Assembly (NCBI RefSeq): GCF_036971445.1
Contig: NC_091473.1
Span: forward strand, 208,010,001-208,074,000
Source of the DNA: Narcine bancroftii
Lineage: Eukaryota
Length of the DNA stretch: 64,000 nt
Direction: 5' to 3'
The notes under the pieces are model-generated. The model worked only from the letters and a program-made list of their open reading frames with translations, was not told the DNA's origin and did no database searches. The number at the start of each line of letters is the position of its first letter. Position 1 is the stretch's first letter. Shown here one piece after another: positions 1 through 60,335 of this stretch. Both the position numbers and the translations under genes were made by a program.

Positions 1-180
1 AGTAAATAAATTCACAGACAGTCCTGTCAATAAATGCATGACCAACAGATGAAGCAAACATCCAATGTCATTTCCAAATTCATTTACCGTGTTACAGAAA
101 TTGCTTCCCGACTTATGTCTCAACAGAGAGTCTATGTCTCTGAGGGAGAAAGGCATGGAATAATCCAAGGAACAGCAAAA

Positions 181-400
181 GGCAGCTCGGTTAGTGTAGT
201 GGTAGCACAACGCTGTTACACCACCACCAACTGGGGTTCAAATCTGGCGCTGTCTATAAGGAGTTTGTACGTTTTCCCTGTGTGTGTGTGGGTTTCCTCC
301 AACCATTCAAATTGTACCAGGGTGTGTAGTTCAATTGGGTGTATTTGGGTGGGACAGGCTCGTGGGGTGAAAACACTTGTTACCGTGCTATATGTCTAAA
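181..400 (+). mobile_element. tRNA-derived SINE (HE1/V-SINE-like)
   Basis: Pol III A/B-box-like head (GGTTCAAATC ~235-244) followed by the gagtttgtacgtt..tgggtttcctcc core; similar copies at 11134, 14905 and 31402. Confidence 0.75.
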
Positions 401-1129
401 TTTAATATTCAAAAATCCCACAGAGGAGATTTAAGCATGGCATATAAGGTGACTCTCTCCTGCAGTACTGAGGCAGTGACCCAATGTCTGACGTGTGGGA
501 TTTTGATCAAAGTTGCACCAAATCTCTCCCTCAAATGCAACGAATGATCCTCAGTGAATGTTTTGCACCAGAATATTGTTCACAGAAAAAAGGAAGAATT
601 TGGCAGGAAGGTTATTGTATAAATCAGAACATTTCACCGGTAATGTTTTTGCATGGAATGAAGTTACACCGGCCTGAATACCTGAACCTCGTCAATATGA
701 AATGTGTGATATGGTGGCACCTGGGGACTCTTCTTCTGAAATTCAATTGAACTGACCCCACAGTGAATTTGTTCCTGCTTTACAGGTTTTCCAAATGTAG
801 TGGCAGAGGAGCTTGATGAAGCAGGAGGGAATGTTAACATGGATAAGAAAGGAATTTGGAAATCCATTAGCCCAGTCCTGAGTAAATGCAGGAATCTTGG
901 AAGGTTGAAAGGTTCACGGAATACACAGCTCCCAGTGTCCAGAGAGGAAATGCACAAGTTAAGAGGCAGAATCTACTTGAAAGATCTGGTTCTCATTTGA
1001 CTGGAAAAGTGCAACCAATGATCATGTGGTTACTTCAGCTAATTCCTGGGCATTAATGGGTGCTTAGGTTTTCATTACTTTAATCTTCTCAATGGCTTGA
1101 AAAGTTGTGAATCATTTCTTAATGTTCAG

Positions 1130-1430
1130 TGTGTGACAAACGACATCTCCTCTATTTCCTCCACATCTGCTCCAACTCCCCCTCTCCTCTTCTCCACATT
1201 TTCCACTTCTCCAGCCTCTCCATTCAACAGATCAACCTTGGTGATTTCTGCCACCTTCAATGAGCTTCCACCACCAGGTGCATCTTCCCCTTCCCTTCCA
1301 TTTCAGTGCTCTGAAGGGACTGTTTTCCTTGCACCTCCCTTGGCCACTTTTCATCTCCACATTTCACTCCCCTTACAGCACTCTCCCTGCAACCACAACA
1401 CTTGCTTTTTCCCCTCTTTCCTCACTCTCC
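1130..1430 (+). mobile_element. Old Penelope-like element fragment
   Basis: gatttctgccaccttcaa..ccaccaccaggtgcatcttcccc resembles the PLE segments at 43720 and 44590. Confidence 0.4.
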
Positions 1431-2104
1431 ATGGATTGTTTACAAATAAAGGGATATCCAGCAAGTGGGATTCCAAATGTGAGATAGGTGGACTTCAGGA
1501 CCAACATGATCCTGTTAAAACGCAGGATAAAACTGGTAGGAGGAGGGAACCTTGGACAATGAGGGATTTCAAGGATCTGGTCATGGAAAGACAAGGAGGC
1601 ACATGGACAAGTTGGGTTGAAGGGTTGGTTTCTGAGCTATGACTCCATGACAGATTTGATAGCAGGAGATTTTGTTTTGGCCCATTGTCAGAATTATCTG
1701 GAGCAGAGTTGTGGGCAAGACTAGTCTTGGCCACCAAAATAGAGTCACAGAGTCAGAGAGGGTTGAAACAGTCCCTTTGGCCCTACTTGCATGCACTGAC
1801 CAGAATGTCTGACCCACACTCATCCCACCTGCCTGCTTTTCATGTCTTTCCCTCCAAATTTATCCATGTATCAATCCACATTTTTCTTAAAACATGCCTC
1901 AACTTCCTCTTCTGCCAGCCCATTCCATACAGCCACAACCCTCTGTTTAAAAAAGTTATGCCTCATGTTCTATTGGATATATTCTGCGAATGAAAGGATA
2001 GTGAGCAAACTTTGGCCAAGATTTCAATTAGGTGGAAAATAAAATTACAAAATATTTACTTCACAATAGTTTCCTCCAGTAGATGGAGGTGAAATGTTGA
2101 ACTG

Positions 2105-2240
2105 CAGTGCACAATGGTGCAGGAGAAACTCAGCAGGTCACTCAGCACTGATGGGAAGTAAAGGGTAACCAGCATTTCAGCCCTGAACCCTTTGTCAAGG
2201 TAATGAACAAAAAGCAGTGTTGATATCTTGCTTCAAAGAC
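2105..2240 (-). mobile_element. Penelope 3' UTR-type remnant with strongly decayed hammerhead motif
   Basis: Minus strand TTGACAAAGGGTTCAGGGCTGAAATGCT..gacctgctgagtttctcc; parallels 46931-47072. Confidence 0.45.
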
Positions 2241-3737
2241 ATTATTCAACCAGATAGCAATGGCCATGATTCCCAGGTGTCAGCTTCTCTGAGGATCTGT
2301 CCTGGAGCCTCCATTTTGATGCAACCACAAAGAAGGTTCCCCAGTACCTATACAACCCAGACCTGTGTTGTGGTGAAGTGTCACAGGACAGGAGGTAGCT
2401 GGACCATAACTACACTCAATGGGCTGAATGGCGCTGGTCTGGCCTGCTATTGGGACTCTCCCCACCCTGCCACACAGGAAAAGGTGGGACCTGGCTGGGC
2501 CTCAGGATGTTGGAGACCTGCAGTGAGGAGCACCAAGACCTCAACACCCTATGGTTTCATTTCTGGGTCTCTGGGCCAAGAACACCCTGACACAAAGCAA
2601 ACCTGGGTTAGCAAAGCTGTCATGTAACATAACAAATTTAAATGTCTGAAACATAAAAACTGACGTAAATTCTGCCACAAAAGGTACTTTGTTTAAAATA
2701 AGCGATCTACAGTTCACTGAAACCACAAAATGTACCCCGAAGTCCTTCATCACAAATGATCTTCCCAGATCTGCCGACCGAGAGTTCCCAGATGAATGGG
2801 GACTGTGAGCCTTTACCAGGCCCAACTTGGTAGGGAATCATAGTGTTGGAATCCCTCTTGTAATCCTGGGAAGCCCAGCTCCATGTGGAGAAGTGTGGTG
2901 AATGGCCCACTACATCTCAGTAAACTCTGTACAGTGGGTCTGTGCATGTCCAGGACTAACTGTAGTGCACGTGGCTGCACACTGTTGGTTCCCTTTGGAA
3001 CTGCCACTCACTGCCAGCACTGTCTGATCCTGGTGAGCCTCAGCTTCATAAGGAGTCAGTAATTCAAGTAAAGGATGATCTGAGGAACCTCACTGCTCTT
3101 CATTGATGTCAGCCTTTAGTAATACAGGGATTCCTGGAGCAAAGAACTGGGATCATCTGGATGCCCTCCAGCCAATCAATGTCTGTCCATTCATCCACAG
3201 CAGAGTCATTCTTCAGCAGAGGAGTCCCCAGTGGAGGAGAACTTTGGGAACTCGGGTCCCTCCCGACATCACTAAAGCAGACCGTCTGGACTTTTTCCTG
3301 GTTCCGTTTGTGGGACCAAGCTGCAGACAAGTTGGGTACAATGTGTCTGCACCTCAAGGGCTAGGGAAGAGTTTGGGATGTTTTGGGGATATGAAAATCA
3401 ATGAAAAACACAAATGAACTTTCACCAAATAAAAGGGTCAAAATAAAAATGAAAGAGGCTGGGTGTCAAAAATCTGACTGAAGGACTTTAATGAAAGGCC
3501 ATTGATGTAAAATATAATCTCTGTGTCCCTTCCCACAGAGGATCGGAGAGCTGCCAAGTGTCTCTGGTGGAGAGGCACAATGTCAGTGAGTGGGATTTAC
3601 ATCCAAGGTTCTTCTACATCCCAAGATCTGCAGATTGTAAGTGCAATTTAATAGGGATCAGTGTTCTGAATGATGGTCAGGAGGTGAACTTGGAAAACAC
3701 ATCAAATCGTCAGCAGGGAGTCAAGTGTAGAGGGTTA

Positions 3738-4544
3738 GAAGCTGAGTGGGTCAGCAGGATGCTGGGATGGAGAGGGGAGAAGTGCTTGGTGGGACAGCAA
3801 GGTGCTGGGATGGAGGATGAGGAGCTGGGTGGGGCAGCGGGGTGCTGGGATGGAGAGGGAGGAGCTGGGTGGGACAGCAGGGTGCTGGGGTGGAGAGGCG
3901 AGAAGAGCTGGGTGGGTCAGCAAGATACTGGGGTGGAGAGGCGAGAAGTGCTTGGTGGGACAGCATAGTGCTAGGATAGAGGGGGAGGAGCTGGGTGGGA
4001 CAGCAGGGTGTTGGAGTGGATGGGGGAGAGGAGCCCATTGGACAGCAGGATAATGGGGTGGAGGGGAGATTTTCTGGGTGGGACAGCAGGGTGCTGGTGT
4101 GGAGAGGGGAGAGGTGCTGGGATGGAGGGGAGGAGCTGGGTGGGACAGTGGGGTGCTGAGATGGAGGGGAGGAGCTGGGTTGGACAGCAGGGTGCTGGAG
4201 AGGAGAGGTGAGAGGTGCTGGGTGGGTTAGCAGGATGCTGGGATGGAGAGAGAAGTGCTTGGTGGGACACCAGTGTTCTGGGGTGGAGAGGGGACAGGAG
4301 GTGGGAAGTACAGCAGTGTGCTGGGGTGGAGATGGGAGAGGTGCTGGGTGGGTCAGCATAGAGTTAGGATAGAGGGGGGTGGAGCTGGGTGGGACAGCAG
4401 AGTGCTGGACTGAAATGGGTAGAGGAGCCCATTGGATAGCAGGGTGCTGGAGTGGAGGTGACAGGAGCTGGGTGGAACTGCAGGGTGCTGGGGTGGAGGT
4501 GACAGGAGCTGAATGGGACAACAGGGTGCTGGGGTGGAGGTGGG
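3738..4544. repeat. G-rich (plus strand) ~40-43 bp degenerate tandem repeat, ~19-20 units, in the J-C intron; switch-region-like
   Basis: Consensus ~GACAGCAGGGTGCTGGGRTGGAGRGGGAGGAGCTGGGTGG; 10 AGCT counted plus AGCA/TGCT in most units. Confidence 0.9.
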
Positions 4545-4559
4545 TTTGATAACACAGTG

Positions 4560-4900
4560 CTGGATTTTCCAAAAGAATAACCTGGGGATGTGGTTTGCAG
4601 CTCGGTTTGGATTCGGCCTCATCTCAGGAAGTGGAAAGAACATCAGAAAAATTAGGCATTTTGACTCTAAACTCTGAGCCATGTTAATACATAATGTGGA
4701 CTGAAATGCTTAGAGTTCTCGAGCATCTCTAAATATTGCAATTCAAGAGAAAAGAGAAAGCAAATTTGTTCAGCTGAAAAATCACATCTCAACCGGGTTC
4801 ACTGGAACCCTGGGGTTATTCAGACTTTAACCGGATCACACATGTGCAGACCTTTTCCCCAGCCAGGTCTTATCTAACAGTTATAACCACGAAAGCAGCC
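4560..4900. promoter_or_regulatory. Candidate J-C intronic enhancer (motif cluster)
   Basis: TGTGGTT (RUNX, 4589), GGAAGTGGAAA (ETS/IRF composite-like, 4627), CAGCTG (4771), CATGTG (4841), AACCAC (4885), kB-like GGATTTTCC (4562); motif evidence only. Confidence 0.3.
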
Positions 4901-5056
4901 GACAGGAAACCCCGATTCCAGTAACTGGAGAAACCGCCCGTCTCGGGGAGATTCAAGTAATTGCTTCAATATCTCACTGGCCTCAGTGAATCAGCTCAAA
5001 GGGCAAATTAATAAAATACAAATGGGAAAGGGTGGAATGGAGAAGTAGGGTCTTAC

Positions 5057-5101
5057 CTGAAGTCACTGTCAGCGAGGTTCCTTTCCCCCAGTAGTTGAGC
5101 G
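5057..5101 (-). CDS. IGHJ: Ig heavy chain J segment (LNYWGKGTSLTVTS), IgW-like
   Basis: WGxG motif, GTAAG splice donor at 5056-5052, upstream 23-RSS. Confidence 0.95.
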
Positions 5102-5140
5102 CACACTGCTCCGTCTCCCGACTCACCCAATACAGTAACT
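5102..5140 (+). other. J recombination signal (23-RSS)
   Basis: CACACTG (5102-5108) + 23 nt + ACAGTAACT (5132-5140). Confidence 0.85.
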
Positions 5141-5480
5141 TCACTGAGCCGTCACCTCCAGTTATCTCAGCCAAGTGTCAGAATGAACCCTGTCCGGACC
5201 AGGAGCAGCCGCTTCCCAAATCTCTGTCACCAACTCCGTCCTCGTCTCTTCCTGACGAGCGAATAAAAGCAGCATTTTGGGCAGTTTTCCTGTCTGCGGG
5301 CACCGGCTCCCCCGCCCCGCGAGAAACTCAGTCGCCGGCTTTGGGGTGTTTAATTGCCCGCAAATGGACATTTCCTCAAACAGCCGCAGTCAGGCTTCGG
5401 GGATGTGACCCTGGGAAGCAGCAATGCGGGATCCGTGGAGACAAGACTGCGCTGCAGACGCTCATTTGTCGGGCGGGACC

Positions 5481-5508
5481 AGTTTCTGCTCAGCTCCCTA
5501 CCACCGTG
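5481..5508 (-). other. 3' D recombination signal (12-RSS)
   Basis: Minus strand CACGGTG (5508-5502) + 12 nt + GCAGAAACT (5489-5481). Confidence 0.85.
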
Positions 5509-5524
5509 ACACTCCAGCTAGAGT
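5509..5524 (-). CDS. IGHD: Ig heavy chain D segment, 16 bp (ACTCTAGCTGGAGTGT)
   Basis: Flanked by two outward-facing 12-RSS, midway between V and J; open frames TLAGV and SSWS, third frame has a stop. Confidence 0.88.
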
Positions 5525-5552
5525 CACGGTGACACACCGCCGTTCAACAACC
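5525..5552 (+). other. 5' D recombination signal (12-RSS)
   Basis: CACGGTG (5525-5531) + 12 nt + TCAACAACC (5544-5552). Confidence 0.85.
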
Positions 5553-5863
5553 TCCGTCCCTCGCTCTGTCTCCGACCCCACTCTCCCCTCAGTTAAACCG
5601 TCCCGACACTGTCCCGGCTCACAGATCCCCTCCCATCCACACTGGCCAGGGGGCTGGGGCCGCCGCTTCGTGCTCCTGGTTCCGATACTCCAGTCCCATC
5701 CGCGGCGCTTGGCTCCGACCTGTTCTGTGATCGATCCCCTCGTCCTTCAACCACTCGCCTCCTATTGCAGGGAGGGCCGACGGGGGCACAGCAAGGCCGG
5801 GAATCCCTGTGGTGATCACTGCTGCCCTCTCACTCCGCGCCCTGAGGGCAGGCGCTCTCGCTG

Positions 5864-5902
5864 GGTTTTTGCAGCGGTCCAGCCCCGCTTCCTCTCGCCG
5901 TG
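5864..5902 (-). other. V recombination signal (23-RSS)
   Basis: Minus strand CACGGCG (5902-5896) + 23 nt + GCAAAAACC (5872-5864). Confidence 0.92.
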
Positions 5903-6200
5903 TCTCTCGCACAGTAATAGGTGGCCGTGTCTTCCACTTTCAGCTTGTTCATTTGTAGGTAGAAGTTGTTACTTCCCTTGGAAGCGGTGAATCTGTCTTG
6001 GATTCCAGGCGCGTAATACTTGCTACTTTCGGTATAATACGCCACCAACCATTCCAGCCCTTTCCCGGAGACCTGTTTCACCCAGTGCATGTAGTAGCTG
6101 CCGAGATTGAACCCTCTAGTTTCACAGGTCAGTCTGTAGGACTCCCCGGGCTTCTTCACCGCTGACGCGACCTGTGTCAGGACGACGTCGGACCGCACGC
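5903..6200 (-). CDS. IGHV: Ig heavy chain V exon, IgW-like, intact
   Basis: (G)[41 protein letters not shown] with conserved C/W/C; ttactgacAG acceptor at 6202-6201; no stops. Confidence 0.96.
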
Positions 6201-6309
6201 CTGTCAGTAAAAGAGAAAAGAGTGGATTTTAATGATCGGTTCAACGGCGAGAGAGTCTCCGAGAAGCAGCCGGGCCCGGCCGGGCTGGGTGAAGACACGG
6301 GGCACCCAC

Positions 6310-6355
6310 CTGCCAGACAGGACAGAAAGAGAAAGAGATAAGGAGCGATCCCCAT
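6310..6355 (-). CDS. IGHV: Ig heavy chain leader exon (MGIAPYLFLFLSCLA-G)
   Basis: ATG at 6355, 46 nt, phase-1 GTGGGT donor; splices in frame to the V exon across a 109-nt intron; MGIA..GVRS leader resembles chondrichthyan IgW leaders as I recall them. Confidence 0.92.
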
Positions 6356-6443
6356 CGCCCCGCGCACTGAGCCAGACTTGGACACTCCACAGATCGGCGG
6401 CTTCAGCTCAGACCGGCTTTGTCGGGAGCTGCAGTGAGCGCTG

Positions 6444-11674: not shown

Positions 11675-12452
11675 TCAGGCAATATGAGATTGTACTTTAT
11701 AGCTTCTAACATATCGGAAGAGGAAATAAACAGGCAGATGATTATTTGGTTGGGGAGAAAATTCAAAATTTGGAAGTGTAAAGGGACTTGAGGTTCTTGT
11801 GCACGATACCCGAAAGGTTGGATTAGCAGTCAAGAAAGTGAATGCTATGTTGGCATTCATTTCAAGAGGAATAGTGTATAAGGGTAAAGAGGTGTTGACG
11901 AAGCTCTACGGGGCACTGGTGAGACCTTATTCAGAGTACTGTGTTCAGTTTTCAGCCCCTTATCTTAGAAGGGATGTAATGATGTTGGAGAGAGTACGGA
12001 GAAGATTTACCAGGATGATTCCTGGAATGCAAGGGCTAACACATGAGGAACGCTTAGCAGCTCTTGGACTGTATTCATTGGAGAATAGAAGAATAAGAAG
12101 GGATCTCGCAGAAACATTTTGAAAACTGAAAGGATTGGACAGAGTAGAAGTGAATAAATATTTCCCTTGAGGACAAGAGGACACAGTCTTAGAATTAGAA
12201 GGAACCCATTTAAAACAGAGAGGAGGAGAAATTTCCTTAGCCAGGGGGTTGTGGATTTGTGGGATTCATTGCCACATAAAGTCGTGGAGGCCCGATCATT
12301 GGAGGAGTTAAAGGAAGTATCTAATTAGTCAGAGTATCAAGGATAATGGGGAAAAGGCCGGAAATTGGAACTAGACGCGAGAAAGGTTTAGCTCGGTGTG
12401 GAGTTGCGGAACAGATGTGATGGGCTGAATGGCCTACTTCTGTTTCTTGTGA
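11675..12452 (+). mobile_element. CR1 LINE 3' fragment
   Basis: ALVRPYSEYCVQFSAPYLRRD..RRFTRMIPG..LGLYSLE. Confidence 0.85.
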
Positions 12453-14904
12453 ATATTTTACTGATGGCAGATGTTCAGCCAAGTGGCCTGTGATTGCAGA
12501 CTTCCTGCTCTACCTTCCTGAATGTAGGAAATACATTTTCTGTATCTCATCGAAGGGAATTGCTCCAAACTTCATGAAATTTGAAATATTAAAAGCAGTT
12601 ACCAAACATCAGAATTCACAGCTATTTTTCCAAAAAACACTGATCCCTTTATTGTTCTGTTCTTAACATGCTCACCTAATCATCCAATCTCAGAAAACAC
12701 TGACCTGATGATTTAATATTTCTGCTGTCTCACTAACGTTACTTGGAGGTATTAACCCCCATCTCACTTGAACTAGATTAGCAGGACGATGGGAACCAGG
12801 ATGCCAGATCAGATATGGGAGTGAAGGAGGAAAGAGATGGACTGAAGATTCAAGATTACAGGAAATGTCAGAGTTTTCAAGTGCATCTATTTCTATGCAG
12901 AAGTATTATTGGAAAGGCAGACGAGCTTAGAGCAAAGATTGGCATGTGGATTATGACATTGTGCCCATTTGTGAAACTTGACTGCATAAGGGGCAGGACT
13001 GACAGCTCAATGTTCTGGGCTTCTATTGATAGAACAGGGGGATGAAAGGGGGAAGAGGAGCATTGCTCATCAAGGAAAATAGCACAGATGTGCTCAGACA
13101 GGACAGACCAGAAGACTCCTCTCCTGAGGCTATATGGGTCAAGCTGAGGTCTGGGAAAGGTATGACCACCCTCATGGAGTTATATTATAGACTGCCCAAT
13201 ACTCAACGAGAATTGGAAGAGCAAATGTGTAGAGAGATAGCAGACAGCTGCAGGAAACATAAAGGTGTGATAGGAGGAGATTTTAACTGTCCACATATTG
13301 ACTGGGGCTCCCATTACTGTAAAAGAGCTGGATGGCTTGAAGCTTGTCAAATGTGTTGAGGAAAGTTTTCTCAATTAATATACAGAGGTATCAACTAGAG
13401 AGAATGCAATATTGAATCTCCTATTAGGGAACGAGACTAGAGAGGTGACAGAAATATGTGCAGGGTAATATTTTGAGACCAATGATCATAATGTTATGCA
13501 TCGCAAGTTAATTATGGAGAAGGATAGGTCTGGGCCTCGAGTTGAGATTGTAAATTGGAGCAAGACCAATTTTGAGGAAATGAGAAAAGATCTAGAACAT
13601 GTAGATTGGGATAAGTTGTTTTCTGGCAAAGATGTGCAAGGTAAGTATAAGACCTTTAAAAGTGAAACTTTGAGAGCACATTGTTTGTATGTTCCTGTCA
13701 GGATTAAAAGCAAACTTAACAGGCATATGAAACCTTGGTTTATGAGGGATACTGGGGATCTGGTTTGGAGGAAGAGAGAGATAAATAACAGGCATAGACA
13801 ACACGGAGTAAATGAAGTTCTTGAGAAGTATGATAAATGCAAGAAAAAAGAAAGAAATCAGGAAGACTAAAAGAAGACTTGAGGTTGCTTTGGCAAACAA
13901 TGAGATGGAAAATCCTCAAGGTTTCTACAGCTTTACTAAATGCAAAAGGAAAGTAGGGTCACAATTGGTCCCCTTGAAGATCAGATTGATCAGCTATACA
14001 TGCAGCCAGAAGAGATGGGGAGGTCTTAAATAGGCATTTTGTATCACTATTGAATCAGGAAACTGGCACAGAATCCAGGGAAATAGGCAAACAAGCAGAG
14101 TAAAGAGGAGGTGGTGCTTGCTGTTGTAAAGCAAATAAGGATGGATTGATCCCCATGGTTGACAAGATATTCCCTTGGGCCTTGAGGGAGGCTAGTGTAG
14201 AAATTGCAGGAGCTCTGGCAGAAATATTTAAAATGTCCTCAGCCACGTGTGTGGAGCCGGATCATTGGAGGGTAGCTCATGTTGTTCCGTTGTTTAAAGG
14301 AAGTTCCAAAAGTGACCGTGAAAATCATCAGCTGGTGAGAGCCTGACATCAGTAGTAGGTAAATGACTGAAAGGTGTTCTAAGAGATCGGATATACAAGT
14401 ATTTGGATAGTGAGGGACTGGTTAGGGATCGTCAACATGGCTTTGTTTGTGGAAGGTCACGTTTAACCAATGTTTCAGAGTTTTTTGAGCAGAAAAGTTG
14501 ATGAAGGTAAGGCTGTGGATGTTATCTCCATGGACTTTAGTTAAGGCCTTTTACAAGGTCCCACATGGCAGGTTAGTCAGGAAGGTTCAGACACTTAATA
14601 TTCATGGTGAGGGAGTAAACAGGATTCAAGATTGGCTATACAGGAGAAGGCAGAGAGTGGTAGTGGATGATTGATTGCTTCTTAGAATGGAGGCCTGTGA
14701 CTAGTGATGTACCTCAGGGACTGGCTCTGTGACCATTATTGTTTGTTATCTATAGCAAAGGTAATGTGGTGAATTAGATCAGCAAACTTGGAGGTGTTGT
14801 GGACAACGAGGAAAGCTTTCAAATTTGCAGAGGGATCTGGACCAGCTGAAATGGGCTGAAAAATGGCAGATGGAGTTTAATGCAGACAAGCGTGAGGTGT
14901 TGCA

Positions 14905-15198
14905 TTTTAATTTAATTTCGACATACAGCATGGTAACAGGCCCTTTTGGCCCATAAGCCCATGCTGCCCAATTACCCCCAATTGACCTACAACTCATGGT
15001 AAGTTTTGAAAGTTGGGAGGAAAACGGCGACCCGGGAAAACTGACTCAGACATGGGGAGAACGTACATACTCCTTACACACAACACAGAATTCAATCACT
15101 GGTCCAGATCCCTGGAGCTGTAACAGTGTTGATCTAATGGTGTTGTCCCCTAACTGTTACACTAAGGGCGACACCCCTACACTAACCATGCCACCCCG
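14905..15198 (-). mobile_element. tRNA-derived SINE inserted in CR1
   Basis: Reverse complement of the 181/11134 family; splits CR1 gttgcattt|..gggacaaac. Confidence 0.7.
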
Positions 15199-15690
15199 AT
15201 GAATTTTCAAGGGACAAACTGAGAAACGGCATACATGGTAAATAATAGGGCACTGAAGAATGTGATCGAACAGAGGGATCTGGGAATACAGATACATAAT
15301 TTTCTGAAAGTGTGTCACACGTGGAAAAATGTTGCAAAGAGAGCTTTTGTCATATTGGCCTTTATAAATCTAAGTATTGAATATAGGATTTGGGATGTCA
15401 TTTTCGAGTTGTATTGAGATTGGTGAGGGCAAGTTTGAAGTACTGTGTGCAGTTTTGGTCACCGAACGACAGGAAAGATATCAATACGATTGAAAATGTG
15501 CAGAGAAGATTTACTTGGATGTTAACATAAGCAGGAACTGAGTAACAGGGAAAGGTTAAAGAGGTTAGGAATTTATTCCCTGGAGCAGAGAAGAATGAGG
15601 GGAGATTTGATCGAGGTATTTAAAATTATGAGGCATATAGTTAATGTAAATAGGCTTTTTTGAACTGAAGGTGGGTTAGATACAAACCAG

Positions 15691-17020
15691 AGAGAGCTTG
15701 CCGCGGACCTCCATCTCCTAAAATGATAAGATGATAAAAACTATTAGATTGAGTGTGTAAAAGTAGAAGACACATTTTTCTTGTTCATTTTCCTTTGTGT
15801 GAAGACATTGTTTTATGGAACACATGTCAAACTCTGGCCCGCGGGCCAAATTTGGACTGCGATATAATTATATTTGGCCCGCAAGATCATTTCAAAAATG
15901 TATTAGAGGTGGCCCGCTGGCCGCCGCGCCAGTATAGCGCATGCACAGCTAATACTATAAATCCCAGAATGCATTGGCGTCAGCCCGCTAATCGCCCTCA
16001 CTTCCTCTGTTTACGTTGCAGGGTCTCACCGTGGACTCTGGTTTTGGGGCCTGGCCGATGTCAGGGGAAGCCAAGGCCGCTTCCCAGCGCCCGGAACCGG
16101 AGGCCTCGGGCCTGACCTCACCAGGACCGTTGCCCACTCCCCCTCCCTGCCGCAGGACGACCCGCGACTCACGGTGACGGGGCTGCTGATCCGCCAAGAT
16201 GCCGCCCTGCAGCGAGAGCCGATGCCCCCGCACTGTCGTTGTCCAACCAGATCGCCCGCAAACCCCGCCCTCCCGCACACAGGCCTGAGTAAGTATTATG
16301 AATTTTAATCTCAGGATAAAATGATCTTCCAATTGTTTCATGTCACAGTTATAAATATATTCCTGGTTAAAAATGGTCCTGCACCTGGATACAAGCTCAT
16401 TAGGCATAAAACTTGAAAAGTGTGTAAATCAAAGGATATCTGTACCAATGGAAAAAGGGCATGGCAAATAACCCTGCTAGAGTTCATGCCCACAATCAGT
16501 CACCCATTTGATTGTTTCAGGAATCATGTTATTCTCCCACATTCTCCATAGCCCTCAGATTTTACTATTCGACAGCCACTAGCAACATTTGACAAATCCG
16601 CTATAGAGAAATATTATTTATTGAATATTTTATTTCTCATTTGTTCATGCTTCTGGAAAGAGTTTATCCAAAACTATTATTAAACATTTATTTTAATAAG
16701 AAAAAGTTTAACATTACATATGTTGAAAGAAGTGAAAACCTGCAGATGTTGTTGAAAATTTTCAATAAATATTTAGTTCGGCCTTCGACTTAGTCCAAGT
16801 TTTTAATTTTGGCCCTCCGTGAATTTGAGTTTGACACCCCTGTTTTATGGTTTTATTGTGTCGTATATGTTGAATATTTATTGGTTTTGGAGGGGGGTGG
16901 AAGGGGGGAGGGAGGGAAAGGGGGAAAAAAGGGAGAAAATGCCACTGTGTATATTTAATGAGAAACGTTATTATGGTTGATATGGTTCACAGTGTGAAAA
17001 ATAAAAAAATAATTAAAATT
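15691..17020 (+). mobile_element. L1-clade 3' UTR fragment, split by the hAT element
   Basis: ggacctccatctcctaaaatgataag..ggagggggg..aataaaaaa matches the 3' ends at 40700-40960 and 50240-50518. Confidence 0.8.
15819..16842. mobile_element. Non-autonomous hAT (Charlie-like) DNA transposon
   Basis: 8-bp TSD TTTTATGG (15811-15818 / 16843-16850); TIRs AACACATGTCAAACTC / GAGTTTGACACCCCTG; GGCCC subterminal motifs. Confidence 0.85.
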
Positions 17021-36999: not shown

Positions 37000-37635
37000 G
37001 CAAAAGGAGATGGAATGGAGTGACAAAGCAAAGGAAAGGCAACAGGGAAGAAGGTGAGGGATAGGGGAAAGGTTTAACAAAAGCCAGAGATGTCGAATCT
37101 GGTTGGAGGGTGCCCATTCAGAAGAGGTATTGTTCCTCCAATTTGCACGTGGTCTCAGTCTGGCAGAGCACGAGACCACGGACACAGACGTCAGCAAGGG
37201 AATGAGGTAGATCATTGAAATGGGAGGCCACTGGGAGGTCCACATTGTTGTGGCGGATGGAACCAAGGTGCTCAACAAAGCGATCTCCCAGTCTCTCCAA
37301 TGTCAAGGAGACCACAACAGAAGCACCAGTTGCAGCAGATGACCCCTGCAGGTTCACAAGTGAAATGCTACTTCACTTGGAAGGGCTGTTTGGGCCCTAA
37401 AAGGTGATGCGGAAGGTGTGGTCACAGAGGACTATCTCGTGCAGTCACAGGGGTTGGACCCAAGGGAATAATGTGTGGGAAGGGAGAAGTCGACAAGGGA
37501 GTTGTCCCTGCAGAAGGCGGAGAGGGAAATATGTGTCTAGCGGTGGGATCACGAAATAGGTGGTATAAATGGCAGAGGAGGATGTGTTGAATGTGAAGGC
37601 TGGTGGGGCAGTAGCTGAGGTCAAGAGGAATCAGG
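37000..37635 (-). mobile_element. Penelope-like element, GIY-YIG region
   Basis: RLGDRFVEHL..LPVASHFN..KLEEQ. Confidence 0.75.
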
Positions 37636-38478
37636 TTATTGACTGGTGAATGTATACCCTGCTCTGTCAGTGAGTTACTGACTGGCGAAAGGATACCGTG
37701 CTCTGTCAGAGAGTTACTGACTGGCGAAAGGATACCCTGCTCTGTCAGTGAGTTACTGATTGGTGTAAGGTTACCCTGCTCAGTCAGTGAGTTACTTACT
37801 GGTGAATGTATACCCTGCTCTGTCAGTGAGTTACTGACTGACGAAAGGATACCCTGCTCAGTCAGTGAGTTACTGACTGGCGAAAGGATACCCTGCTCAG
37901 TCAGTGAGTTACTGACTGGCGAAAGGATACCGTGCTCAGTCAGTGAGTTACTGACTGGCGAAAGGATACCGTGCTCTGTCAGAGAGTTACTGACTGGTGA
38001 AAGGATACCCTGCTCTGTCAGTGAGTTACTGATTGGTGTAAGGTTACCCTGCTCAGTCAGTGAGTTACTGACTGGCGAAAGGATACCGTGCTCAGTCAGT
38101 GAGTTACTGACTGGTGAAAGGATACCCTGCTCTGTCAGTGAGTTACTGAATGGTGAAAGGTTACCCTGCTCTGTCAGTGAGTTACTGACTGGCGAAAGGA
38201 TACCGTGCTCAGTCAGTGAGTTACTGACTGGTGAAAGGATACCCTGCTCTGTCAGTGAGTTACTGAATGGTGAAAGGTTACCCTGCTCTGTCAGTGAGTT
38301 ACTGACTGGTGAAAGGATACCCTGCTCTGTCAGTGAGTTACTGACTGGTGAATGGATACCCTGCTCTGTCAGTTAGTTACTGAATGGTGAAAGGTTACCC
38401 TGCTCTGTCAGTGAGTTCCTGACTGGTGAAAGGATACCCTGCTCTGTCAGTGAGTTACTTACTGGTGAAAGATACCCA
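37636..38478. repeat. 39-bp minisatellite, ~21-22 copies
   Basis: Unit TTACTGACTGGTGAAAGGATACCCTGCTCTGTCAGTGAG, head-to-tail with no spacers. Confidence 0.95.
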
Positions 38479-59280: not shown

Positions 59281-60335
59281 TTTTCTTTCTTTGGCTTGGC
59301 TTCGCGGACGAAGATTTATGGAGGGGGTAAAAAGTCCACGTCAGCTGCAGGCTCGTTTGTGGCTGACCAGTCCAATGCGGGACAGGCAGACACGATTGCA
59401 GCGGTTGCAAGGGAAAATTGGTTGGTTGGGGTTGGGTGTTGGGTTTTTCCTCCTTTGCCTTTTGTCAGTGAGGTGGGCTCTGCGGTCTTCTTCAAAGGAG
59501 GCTGCTGCCCGCCAAACTGTGAGGCGCCAAGATGCACGGTTTGAGTTTGTGAGCATCTTTTGAGGGGGAGGACGTGGAGGGGGAGGACGTGGAGGGGGAG
59601 GACGTGGAGGGGGAGGACGTGGACCTGTCCTCGGGCCTGCGCAAAGGAGCTTTTAGGTGGAGTGCAGTGCGCGCAGTACTGGCCCCACCCTTTACACCCA
59701 TGGTTCGTGTGCCGTGGCCAAGCAAGCTGGGACGTGGCAGCGAGGTCCTTGGGTCGTAGGTTTTATATCGGAGTGGCCTTCTCCTATGCAGGTTTCTTAC
59801 CCGGGCTGGAGGGGCCTGCCTCCCCTCCTAGGTCGGTCCATACTGCCCGGACCGGGGCCTCCGTCTGCCTCACTCGACCGAGGCCGGGGCCGCCGCCTCC
59901 CCCTTGCTCCTGCCCGTAATCGGGGCCGCCGCCGTCTACCCTTCGCCCGGACCGGGGCCGGGGCCGCCGCTGCTCTCCCTGTGCCCGGACTGGGGCCGCC
60001 GCCTCCCCCTTGCTCCTGCCCGTATCGGGGCCGCCGCCGTCTACCCTTCGCCCGGACCGGGGCCGGGGCCGCCGCTGCTCTCCCTGTGCCCGGACTGGGG
60101 CCGCCGCCTCCCCCTTGCTCCTGCCCGTATCGGGGCCGCCGCCGTCTACCCTTCGCCCGGACCGGGGCCGGGGCCGCCGCTGCTCTCCCTGTGCCCGGAC
60201 TGGGGCCGCCGCCTCCCCCTTGCTCCTGCCCGTATCGGGGCCGCCGCCGTCTACCCTTCGCCCGGACCGGGGCCGGGGCCGCCGCTGCTCTCCCTGATAA
60301 AATTACAAAAATTACAAAAATTACAAAAATTACAA
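59281..60335 (-). mobile_element. Young non-autonomous RTE-clade derivative with 105-bp GC-rich VNTR
   Basis: 13-bp TSD GAATCTGATTGCT (59268-59280 / 60336-60348); C-terminal FPCNRCNRVCLSRIGLVSHKRAC; (AAAG)-type tail; no EN/RT. Confidence 0.8.
59886..60296. repeat. 105-bp GC-rich tandem repeat, ~3.9 near-identical copies
   Basis: cccggactggggccgcc recurs at 105-bp spacing (59984, 60089, 60194). Confidence 0.92.

What the first reader, a model, noticed from the sequence alone, without database searches (positions are those of the whole stretch)
3738..4544. Switch-region-like AGCT/WGCW tandem repeat in the J-C intron of a cartilaginous-fish IgW-like cluster
Seen: ~0.8 kb of ~41-bp units starting ~510 bp 3' of the J donor, with strong G/C strand skew, 10 AGCT, AGCA/TGCT in most units, and GAGCTGGG and GGGGT motifs with G-runs able to form G4. 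Established: GAGCT/GGGGT pentamers and WGCW AID hotspots define tetrapod S regions, which lie between JH and C. Switching between shark IgH clusters has been described as occurring without conventional S regions. Inference: this may be a proto- or convergent switch region that focuses AID breaks for inter-cluster switching. Caveat: the sense (minus) strand is C-rich, the opposite of mammalian S regions, so R-loops would need antisense transcription. WGCW motifs are strand-symmetric and Xenopus S regions work without G-richness.
Basis: partly seen in the sequence, partly recalled or inferred. Interest (0 to 1): 0.8.

Follow-up and report, generated by a model that had tools for sequence, protein, structure and literature searches.

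The report
AID-hotspot-rich repeat in ray IgW intron
An expressed antibody heavy-chain gene of a ray carries, just after its J segment, an 0.8-kb G-rich repeat packed with the DNA motif that the antibody-mutating enzyme AID prefers; it looks like a small class-switch region in a group said to lack them, but it faces the "wrong" way and nothing yet shows that it is used.

Summary
A degenerate tandem array of 19 units of 38-43 nt plus a half unit lies at 3728-4544. It starts 512 nt 3' of the J splice donor of a minus-strand V-D-J heavy-chain cluster. RNA-type runs show that this cluster is rearranged, spliced and highly expressed.

The array is 52% G and 10% C on the + strand. It holds 45 WGCW (55/kb), against 23.6±3.2 in dinucleotide shuffles and at most 26 in any other tile of the 64 kb. 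AGCT alone (10) is only marginally enriched.

After V(D)J joining the array would lie about 1.1-1.9 kb from the leader ATG, inside the classical hypermutation window.

Against a true S region: it is short, its G-rich strand is the template strand (no sense R-loops), its WGCW columns are only slightly better conserved than the rest, and no junctions or mutations could be examined. The C exons lie outside the window, so "IgW" rests on unchecked scan notes.

The scan noted the same kind of array in four other IgW clusters of this genome (s1-878357, s1-878382, s1-878227, s1-878946). I could not read that DNA.

Verdict: a real, S-like AID-target island. A switch function is plausible but unproven, and a neutral minisatellite is nearly as likely.

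The parts
3728..4544 (.). Tandem array: 19 units of 38-43 nt plus one half unit. It is G-rich on the + strand, which is the template strand of the Ig gene. Each unit is two related ~21-nt halves starting WGCTGGG.TGGA and carries three WGCW slots (AGCT/TGCT, AGCA, TGCT).
   Evidence: TRF; unit alignment; motif counts against shuffles
3700..3739 (.). Decayed edge unit on the C-proximal side of the array
   Evidence: Wrap-around alignment to the unit consensus
4545..4565 (.). Decayed edge unit on the J-proximal side (ACAGTGCTGG remnant)
   Evidence: Sequence; alignment
1..5056 (-). The part of the J-to-CH1 intron that lies in the window. Donor GT at 5056-5055. CH1 lies beyond the window start.
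   Evidence: Sequence. RNA contigs end at 5057 and continue in one common sequence (table 7). No Ig C-domain ORF in 1-5056. Scan note s1-878728.
5057..5101 (-). JH segment (..YWGKGTSLTVTS), preceded by the RSS heptamer CAGTGTG at 5108-5102
   Evidence: Sequence; V(D)J joints at 5090-5102 in RNA runs
5509..5524 (-). D segment ACTCTAGCTGGAGTGT, flanked by heptamers CACCGTG (5531-5525) and CACGGTG (5508-5502)
   Evidence: Sequence; D letters (CCAGCTAG etc.) seen between V and J in joined RNA contigs (table 5c)
5903..6200 (-). VH exon
   Evidence: Pfam V-set E=2.7e-16; VH homologues; joints at 5902-5906
6310..6355 (-). Leader exon (ATG at 6355-6353); the leader intron 6201-6309 is spliced out in RNA runs
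   Evidence: Sequence; joint 6199/6200 to 6309/6310 in X5 and X6 only
2103..2336 (.). High-copy interspersed repeat inside the intron. It is not part of the array.
   Evidence: DNA-run depth 19,000-64,000 against about 37 in the flanks, with loose ends at 2103-2154 and 2324-2336

Best explanation
The array is a gene-family-specific, G-rich minisatellite in the 5' part of the J-CH1 intron of an expressed ray heavy-chain (IgW by scan notes) cluster. I propose that it acts as an island of AID hotspots.

Shown:
- Its position, anatomy and motif content.
- Three overlapping hotspots (WGCW) per ~42-nt unit, about one every 18 nt.
- 45 of the 51 GC dinucleotides in the array sit in WGCW.
- The gene is rearranged, spliced and strongly expressed.
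- The intron, array included, is present at a low level in the same RNA-type runs.

Inferred:
- After V(D)J joining the array lies about 1.1-1.9 kb from the leader ATG. That is inside the promoter-proximal zone where AID acts during somatic hypermutation.
- WGCW offers a hot cytosine on both strands one base apart, so lesions there should turn into staggered nicks and double-strand breaks more often than in the rest of the intron.
- The array would then be the favoured breakpoint zone for the hypermutation-coupled exchange of VDJ between clusters described in nurse shark.
- The sister clusters' arrays would serve as partners.
- It would work as Xenopus S-mu does, by motif density and not by R-loops. 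The sense RNA is C-rich, and the G-rich, G4-prone strand is the template. At most this could stall RNA polymerase II.
For: - The array and its enrichment: WGCW 45 against 23.6±3.2 in shuffles, and at most 26 in any other tile of the window. It is the top-ranked window-wide.
- 88% of GC dinucleotides are WGCW, against 46% elsewhere in the window.
- Unit-level null: 3 or more WGCW in 8e-4 of composition-matched 43-mers.
- Slot 1 toggles between AGCT (10 units) and TGCT (5 units) and so stays WGCW in 15 of 19 units.
- The cluster works: many different V(D)J joints with N/D letters, leader-intron splicing and J-donor splicing appear in runs X5 and X6. V depth is up to 1.4 million against about 300-850 over the intron.
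- Distances come from the coordinates.
- The array is not a dispersed family at 90% or more: DNA-run depth over it is 39-66 against about 37 in the flanks, and the unit core occurs nowhere else in the 64 kb.
- AGCT-rich sequence without R-loops supports CSR at about a quarter of the level of a size-matched S-gamma-1 (PMC2442634).
- A 720-bp synthetic array with 36 AGCT supports CSR in a B-cell line (PMC4245955).
- Clusters switch in sharks although S regions are said to be absent (PMC4279169; PMC8201067).
- Unchecked scan notes report 0.82-0.86-kb arrays in four other IgW clusters.
Against: - There is no evidence of use. Contigs cannot show somatic junctions or rare mutations.
- Non-template G density is 10%. 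In mouse cells low non-template G density cuts R-loops and CSR (PMC4245955).
- The array is only 0.8 kb.
- AGCT alone is reached by 54 of 1000 shuffles.
- Total WRC per strand is not enriched: 11-16 per 200 nt against about 10 in the flanks.
- WGCW columns are only slightly better conserved than the others (0.90 against 0.82), and TGGA/GGAG are conserved as well or better.
- Sister arrays can be explained by descent from one duplicated cluster.
- Minisatellites are common here: three arrays of 400 nt or more in 64 kb.
- Inter-cluster switching has been shown only in nurse shark, not in rays.
- The hypermutation window is a mouse and human rule.
Confidence: 0.4

Rival explanations
1. Neutral minisatellite. 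A G-rich 21/42-nt repeat arose by slippage in the intron of an ancestral IgW cluster and was copied along with the cluster. Its WGCW content is an accident of the founding unit, multiplied about 19 times. AID may hit it, but this has no selected consequence.
For: - Units are only 72% alike and decay at the array edges, and there is a ~393-nt higher-order duplication. This is the usual minisatellite anatomy.
- The window holds two other arrays of 400 nt or more (37635-38477, 59876-60296).
- The enrichment rests on only two or three founder motifs. The chance of 2 or more WGCW in a random unit is about 0.02.
- WGCW columns are barely better conserved than the rest.
- The orientation is opposite to mammalian S regions.
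- The second allele or copy differs in the array about as much as in the flank (tables 3-4).
Against: - It is the WGCW maximum of the whole window by a wide margin.
- 88% of its GC dinucleotides are W-flanked.
- Its place coincides with the expected AID zone.
- Arrays of similar length are noted in five clusters whose introns differ by more than 10%: DNA-run depth over the intron stays single-copy at 90% likeness, and the notes are.
Confidence: 0.38
2. Cis-regulatory or structural element. The array is a row of GGGTGGG/GGGGTGG boxes (KLF/Sp1/MAZ-type sites) and template-strand G-quadruplexes. It would act as part of an intronic enhancer or boundary, or would pause RNA polymerase II. The AID motifs would be incidental.
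For: - G4Hunter mean 1.14 over 0.8 kb, against about 0 in the rest of the intron, with five canonical G4 motifs on the template strand.
- The best-conserved tetramers are TGGA/GGAG, with GTGG/TGGG tying AGCA and TGCT.
- In mammals the intronic enhancer lies between JH and S-mu (established knowledge).
Against: - No factor binding or chromatin data are available.
- No octamer lies nearby.
- Enhancers are rarely 19-fold tandem arrays.
- This reading does not explain why nearly every C of the G-rich strand sits in WGCW.
Confidence: 0.12
3. R-loop-type switch region read backwards. An antisense promoter on the C side of the array drives + strand transcription in activated B cells. This would give G-rich RNA, stable R-loops and single-stranded C-rich DNA for AID, as at mammalian S regions.
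For: - The + strand has S-like G density (52%) and G clusters.
- A + strand exon-like piece with AG and GT borders lies at 3540-3637, just upstream of the array in that direction.
Against: - No joint at 3540 or 3637 is among those listed, and the contigs run straight through the piece (tables 5 and 8).
- Contigs carry no strand information.
- The displaced strand would be the C-rich one, whose cytosines are mostly in cold CCC contexts: only 53 of 420 are in WRC.
Confidence: 0.06
4. Alternative coding exon. The 273-codon open frame on the sense strand (4572-3751; Pro/Ser/Thr/Cys-rich) would be spliced into some heavy-chain transcripts.
For: Open frames run on the gene's strand in all three phases.
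Against: - A strand with 52% C and 10% G rarely forms stop codons, so open frames are expected.
- There are no Pfam hits and no relatives in the word search.
- The J donor is spliced to one common sequence outside the window, and no joint in the array is listed.
Confidence: 0.02

Closest known systems
Mammalian S-gamma switch regions (49-mer repeats, e.g. the mouse S-gamma-3 consensus in PMC2442634)
   Same: - Tandem units of about 40-50 nt lying between J (or the I exon) and CH1.
- G about 52-55% and C about 10-14% on one strand.
- The shared string GGAGCTGGG, plus GGGGT.
- WGCW density of the same order: 55/kb here, against 2 per 49 nt (41/kb) in the S-gamma-3 consensus by my count.
   Different: - 0.8 kb against 1-10 kb.
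- The G-rich strand is the template strand, so sense transcription gives no G-rich RNA and no R-loop.
- No I promoter is known.
- Use in recombination has not been shown.
- There is no sequence homology beyond short motifs, so it would be convergent at most.
Xenopus S-mu
   Same: It would have to work the same way: by density of AGCT-type overlapping AID hotspots, without R-loops and largely independent of orientation (PMC2442634).
   Different: - Xenopus S-mu is AT-rich, several kb long and rich in AGCT proper.
- This array is G-rich and short, and most of its WGCW are TGCT or AGCA (35 of 45).
Hypermutation-coupled switching between shark IgH clusters (Zhu et al. 2012; Zhang et al. 2013)
   Same: This is the only known process in cartilaginous fish that the array could serve. 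It involves breaks in the J-C intron, is concurrent with SHM, and runs between IgW and IgM clusters and among IgW clusters (as summarised in PMC4279169).
   Different: - It has been described for nurse shark and as occurring without S regions.
- The primary papers were not held, so I could not check whether repeats in IgW introns were mentioned there.
Sigma-delta, the short S-like region 5' of mammalian C-delta (from memory, not checked here)
   Same: It is a short, imperfect, S-like repeat upstream of the constant exons of IgD, the orthologue of IgW. It supports infrequent, non-canonical switching.
   Different: - It lies in the C-mu to C-delta intron of a translocon locus.
- It is an acceptor for S-mu.
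- No homology is implied.
G-rich hypervariable minisatellites (Jeffreys-type core), including the VNTR near human JH (from memory)
   Same: - Units of 10-100 nt.
- Strong purine/G strand asymmetry and GGGNGG-type cores.
- Degenerate units, decayed edges and higher-order duplications.
   Different: - No unit-number polymorphism was seen between the two forms in the RNA runs, only 1-3-nt indels.
- It is not a dispersed family at 90% likeness or more.
- It has an unusual share of GC dinucleotides in WGCW.

Membership tests
Tetrapod (mammalian-type) S region | Tandemly repetitive sequence | tested here: met
   19 units plus a half unit, period 41-43 nt
Tetrapod (mammalian-type) S region | Lies in the intron upstream of the CH1 exon, downstream of J / the I exon | tested here: met
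   The array starts 512 nt 3' of the J donor. RNA contigs splice from 5057 to a sequence outside the window. CH1 itself was not seen.
Tetrapod (mammalian-type) S region | Length 1-10 kb or more | tested here: not met
   About 0.8 kb (0.87 kb with the decayed edges). S regions are 1-10 kb (PMC2442634).
Tetrapod (mammalian-type) S region | [quoted passage not shown] | tested here: not met
   The gene is on the minus strand. G is 52% on the + (template) strand and 10% on the coding strand.
Tetrapod (mammalian-type) S region | Enrichment of AGCT/WGCW and of GGGG(T) and GAGCT motifs over the surroundings | tested here: met
   WGCW 45 against 23.6±3.2 in shuffles, and at most 26 elsewhere. GAGCT 9, GGGGT 10. 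AGCT alone is marginal (54 of 1000 shuffles). GGGCT is absent.
Tetrapod (mammalian-type) S region | Germline (sterile) transcription from its own I promoter before switching | tested here: inconclusive
   The intron is present in RNA-type runs at about 1/1000 of exon depth. This fits pre-mRNA, but carried-over DNA is not excluded. There is no strand or start information from contigs.
Tetrapod (mammalian-type) S region | AID-dependent breaks, mutations and recombination junctions inside it in B cells | not testable with these tools
   Only contigs were available, and these drop rare variants.
Xenopus-type S region | AT-rich, several kb, dense AGCT palindromes, R-loop independent | tested here: not met
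   GC is 56-64%, length is 0.8 kb, and AGCT is 12/kb. Only R-loop independence would be shared, and that is inferred.
Hypervariable G-rich minisatellite | Tandem units of 10-100 nt with G-rich strand asymmetry | tested here: met
Hypervariable G-rich minisatellite | Unit-number polymorphism between alleles or individuals | tested here: inconclusive
   A second form in runs X5 and X6 differs by substitutions and 1-3-nt indels only. Short contigs cannot count units.
Hypervariable G-rich minisatellite | Member of a family dispersed over many non-Ig loci | tested here: inconclusive
   There is no other copy of the unit core in the 64 kb. DNA-run depth over the array is about 1-1.8 times single copy at 90% likeness or more. 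More diverged copies would be missed, and the genome itself could not be searched.

The most novel reading that the evidence does not exclude
Rays have a dedicated, selected switch region in every IgW cluster: a short, WGCW-dense array placed inside the hypermutation zone that directs AID breaks for cluster-to-cluster class switching. In that case S-region-type targeting either predates tetrapods or arose convergently. It would work with the G-rich strand as template, that is, without sense R-loops.
Probability: 0.2. Interest if true: 0.8.

Novelty: new variant of a known kind. Interest (0 to 1): 0.55.

Why it matters
Reviews state that cartilaginous-fish Ig loci have no switch regions and that conventional class switching begins with amphibians. 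Yet nurse-shark clusters do exchange VDJ and C regions.

A defined 0.8-kb hotspot array at the same place in several IgW clusters gives a concrete, testable candidate for where those breaks occur. It also offers a natural test of whether motif density alone, in the 'wrong' orientation for R-loops, is enough to focus AID.

If the array proves to be an ordinary minisatellite, that too is useful. S-like composition next to a J segment would then not be evidence of switching on its own.

Tried and rejected
- **Repeat ORF as a handle on sister arrays.** I searched the 273-aa sense-strand ORF of the array for relatives, to find sister arrays in other assemblies. None was found.
- **Metagenome scan.** An exact scan for a 22-nt unit core gave nothing.
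- **Scan index.** Look-ups by sequence and by relatives were blank.
- **Primary literature.** Zhu 2012, Zhang 2013, Hsu 2016, Harding 1990 and Lee 2008 are not held. All ten paper searches are used.
- **Coding exon reading.** Rejected.
- **Part of a transposon.** Rejected. The flanks are single-copy in the DNA run, and the only high-copy element in the intron is at about 2103-2336.
- **Ig octamer.** None lies near the array.
- **tRNA-derived SINE heads.** None found.
- **Pfam on six other ORFs of the window.** No hits.
- **Selection on WGCW slots.** This was judged from column conservation and is not decisive.

Full report
**1. What is there**

Tandem Repeats Finder reports one array at 3728-4540. 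Its period is 41-43 nt, with higher-order periods of 83, 126 and 166, and it has 71-75% matches. Aligning the stretch to the unit consensus gives 19 units of 38-43 nt (3740-4544), one half unit (4115-4133) and decayed units at both edges, about 3700-3739 and 4545-4565.

Units are on average 72% identical. Each unit is itself two related ~21-nt halves that both begin WGCTGGG.TGGA. A block of about 120 nt recurs about 393 nt later (3949-4072 resembles 4342-4466).

On the + strand the array has G 425, A 173, T 138 and C 81 of 817. GC skew is +0.56 to +0.70, against about 0 in the flanks.

**2. The gene around it**

An Ig heavy-chain cluster lies on the minus strand:
- Leader exon 6355-6310.
- Leader intron 6309-6201.
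- VH exon 6200-5903 (Pfam V-set, E=2.7e-16). Its RSS heptamer is the unusual CACGGCG.
- A D segment at 5524-5509 between two heptamers.
- J at 5101-5057 (..YWGKGTSLTVTS), with the donor GT at 5056-5055.

No C-domain exon lies in 1-5056. Scan notes place an exon lying between CH1 and CH2 at 619 nt before the window start, and they call the gene an electric-ray IgW. I could not check the isotype or the species myself.

**3. The gene works**

I laid Logan contigs of four runs on 401-6400. Two small runs, X5 and X6, are labelled as probable RNA. They show:
- dozens of different V-to-J joints (5090-5102 joined to 5902-5906) with varied inserted letters that include the D core;
- removal of the leader intron;
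- contigs that leave J exactly at 5057 for one common sequence (agreement 0.95-0.98).

The DNA runs X1 and X9 show none of these. Word depth in X6 is up to 1.4 million over V, but only about 270-850 over the J-C intron, array included. This fits pre-mRNA, although carried-over DNA cannot be excluded. Contigs give no strand, start or rare-variant information.

**4. Is the motif content more than chance?**

*Whole array.*

| Motif | Count in array | Dinucleotide shuffles | Rest of window (308 tiles) |
|---|---|---|---|
| WGCW | 45 (55/kb) | 23.6±3.2; 0 of 1000 reach it | mean 12.9, max 26 |
| AGCT | 10 | 5.9±2.2; 54 of 1000 reach it | mean 2.6, max 7 |
| GAGCT | 9 | 3.6±1.8; 11 of 1000 reach it | mean 0.7, max 4 |
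| GGGGT | 10 | 6.8±2.2; 119 of 1000 reach it | mean 0.6, max 4 |
| GGGCT | 0 | 5.0±1.9; all 1000 reach it | mean 0.5, max 3 |

*Context of GC dinucleotides.* 45 of the 51 GC dinucleotides in the array are flanked by W on both sides (88%), against 46% in the rest of the window.

*WRC per strand.* Total WRC on either strand is not enriched. The excess is specific to the overlapping, two-strand hotspot. On the G-rich strand 52 of 81 cytosines lie in WRC. On the C-rich strand only 53 of 420 do.

*Founder-level null.* A tandem array multiplies whatever its founder unit held, so the fairer null is at the level of one unit. Among composition-matched random 43-mers, 8e-4 have 3 or more WGCW and about 0.02 have 2 or more. 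The second figure applies if the two half units share one origin.

*Conservation of the slots.* The three slots are kept as WGCW in 15, 15 and 14 of 19 units. Slot 1 toggles between AGCT (10 units) and TGCT (5 units). Their columns are only modestly better conserved than the others (0.90 against 0.82). TGGA/GGAG are conserved as well or better. There is thus no clear sign of selection on the hotspots.

**5. Dispersed or local?**

The unit core occurs nowhere else in the 64 kb. In the DNA run X1, at 90% likeness or more, depth over the array is 39-66 against about 37 in the single-copy flanks. A real interspersed repeat at about 2103-2336 reaches 19,000-64,000. So the array is not a high-copy family at that stringency. 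More diverged copies would be missed.

Scan notes, unchecked by me, report arrays of 823, 826, 830 and 856 letters in the J-C introns of four other IgW clusters of this genome (s1-878382, s1-878227, s1-878357, s1-878946). One of these was followed up, with the same reading as mine.

The intron is single-copy at 90% likeness in X1, so those sister introns differ from this one by more than 10%. That much divergence would not erase a neutral array, so their presence is explained by descent as well as by function.

Runs X5 and X6 also hold a second form, about 92% alike, in the flank (3467-3709) and inside the array (4181-4274). It is absent from X1. It differs by substitutions and 1-3-nt indels, many of them towards the unit consensus.

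**6. How it would work**

After V(D)J joining, the distance from the ATG to the array is about 46 + 109 + 298 + ~25 + 45 + 512, or roughly 1.03 kb (coordinates). The array ends near 1.85 kb. In mouse and human, hypermutation runs from about 0.1-0.2 kb to 1.5-2 kb from the start site. This is established knowledge and is untested in rays.

The array would thus sit in the AID zone of the rearranged gene without needing a promoter of its own. One WGCW every ~18 nt offers hot cytosines on both strands one base apart. That is the accepted route from deamination to staggered nicks and double-strand breaks in S regions.

This fits the description of shark switching as concurrent with hypermutation and as breaking in the J-C intron (PMC4279169; PMC8201067).

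R-loops are not expected. The coding strand has 10% G. In a mouse B-cell line, lowering non-template G density from 46% to 29% already cut both R-loops and CSR (PMC4245955).

The working parallel is therefore Xenopus S-mu. It is AGCT-rich, forms no R-loops and gives about a quarter of the activity of a size-matched S-gamma-1 (PMC2442634).

The G-rich template strand is G4-prone (G4Hunter mean 1.14, five canonical motifs). It might stall polymerase, but that is speculation.

**7. Comparison with known S regions**

The mouse S-gamma-3 49-mer consensus is printed in PMC2442634. By my count it has 2 AGCT (41 WGCW/kb), 55% G and 14% C, and it shares GGAGCTGGG with the ray unit. In composition and unit size the array is therefore S-gamma-like.

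It fails two defining features that I could test: length (0.8 kb against 1-10 kb) and G-richness of the non-template strand. The decisive feature, use in B cells, could not be tested. I therefore do not file it as an S region. I call it an S-like AID-target array.

**8. Rivals**

- A neutral minisatellite copied along with the cluster is nearly as likely as my best explanation (0.38 against 0.40).
- A regulatory or structural role, as an array of GGGTGGG boxes or template-strand G4s, cannot be excluded (0.12).
- An antisense-driven R-loop version has no support. A + strand exon-like piece lies at 3540-3637, but no joint there is among those listed.
- The 273-codon sense-strand frame is a composition artefact.

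**9. Limits**

- The primary shark-switching papers were not held. I cannot rule out that repeats in nurse-shark omega introns have been described.
- Read laying and the look-up of sequencing runs allow one call each, and both are used.

**10. Verdict**

This is a real and unusual hotspot island at the right place in an expressed gene, and the scan has seen the same kind of array before on other DNA of this genome. Its function as a switch target is plausible (about 0.4) but unproven.

Noticed in passing
window 5201-5800: The V-to-J intervening DNA, which is lost on rearrangement, has 30-50 times the RNA-run depth of the J-C intron: 12,000-17,000 against about 300 in X6, and 275-450 against about 13 in X5. 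This suggests abundant transcripts from unrearranged (germline) copies of the cluster.
   Followed up: no
window 3467-3709 and 4181-4274: Runs X5 and X6 hold a second form about 92% alike: 19 differences in 243 nt, and 8 substitutions plus a GAG insertion inside the array. It has about 60% of the depth of the main form and is absent from DNA run X1. It is either a divergent allele or a cluster copy missing from the assembled individual.
   Followed up: partly
window 2103-2336: A high-copy interspersed repeat of about 230 nt lies inside the J-C intron (DNA-run depth 19,000-64,000). ARAGORN finds no tRNA-like head.
   Followed up: partly
window 5896-5902: The V gene's RSS heptamer reads CACGGCG, not CACAGTG, yet the cluster rearranges freely (many distinct VDJ joints in RNA runs).
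   Followed up: partly
window 5509-5524: Only one D with heptamers on both sides was seen (ACTCTAGCTGGAGTGT). It contains AGCT, and its core is visible in the junction letters of joined contigs. This agrees with scan note s1-877396.
   Followed up: partly
window 3540-3637, + strand: An exon-like piece antisense to the Ig gene (..cccacag|AGGATCGG...CAGATT|gtaagtgc) lies just before the array. No joint at its borders is among those listed from the runs laid.
   Followed up: partly
window 37635-38477: A well-preserved 39-nt minisatellite with 21.6 copies and 91% matches. It has 25 WGCW/kb, no AGCT and no strand skew. It serves as a local comparison showing that minisatellites are common here.
   Followed up: partly
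window 59562-60296: (GAGGGGGAGGACGTG)x4 is followed by a C-rich 105-nt repeat with 3.9 copies at 99% identity, so it was expanded very recently.
   Followed up: no
run X9 on window 2455-3528 and 3865-4306: A DNA run labelled as a different organism (B) holds contigs identical to the window over 1,074 and 442 nt, the latter inside the array. Either it is the same or a very close species, or the label is wrong.
   Followed up: no
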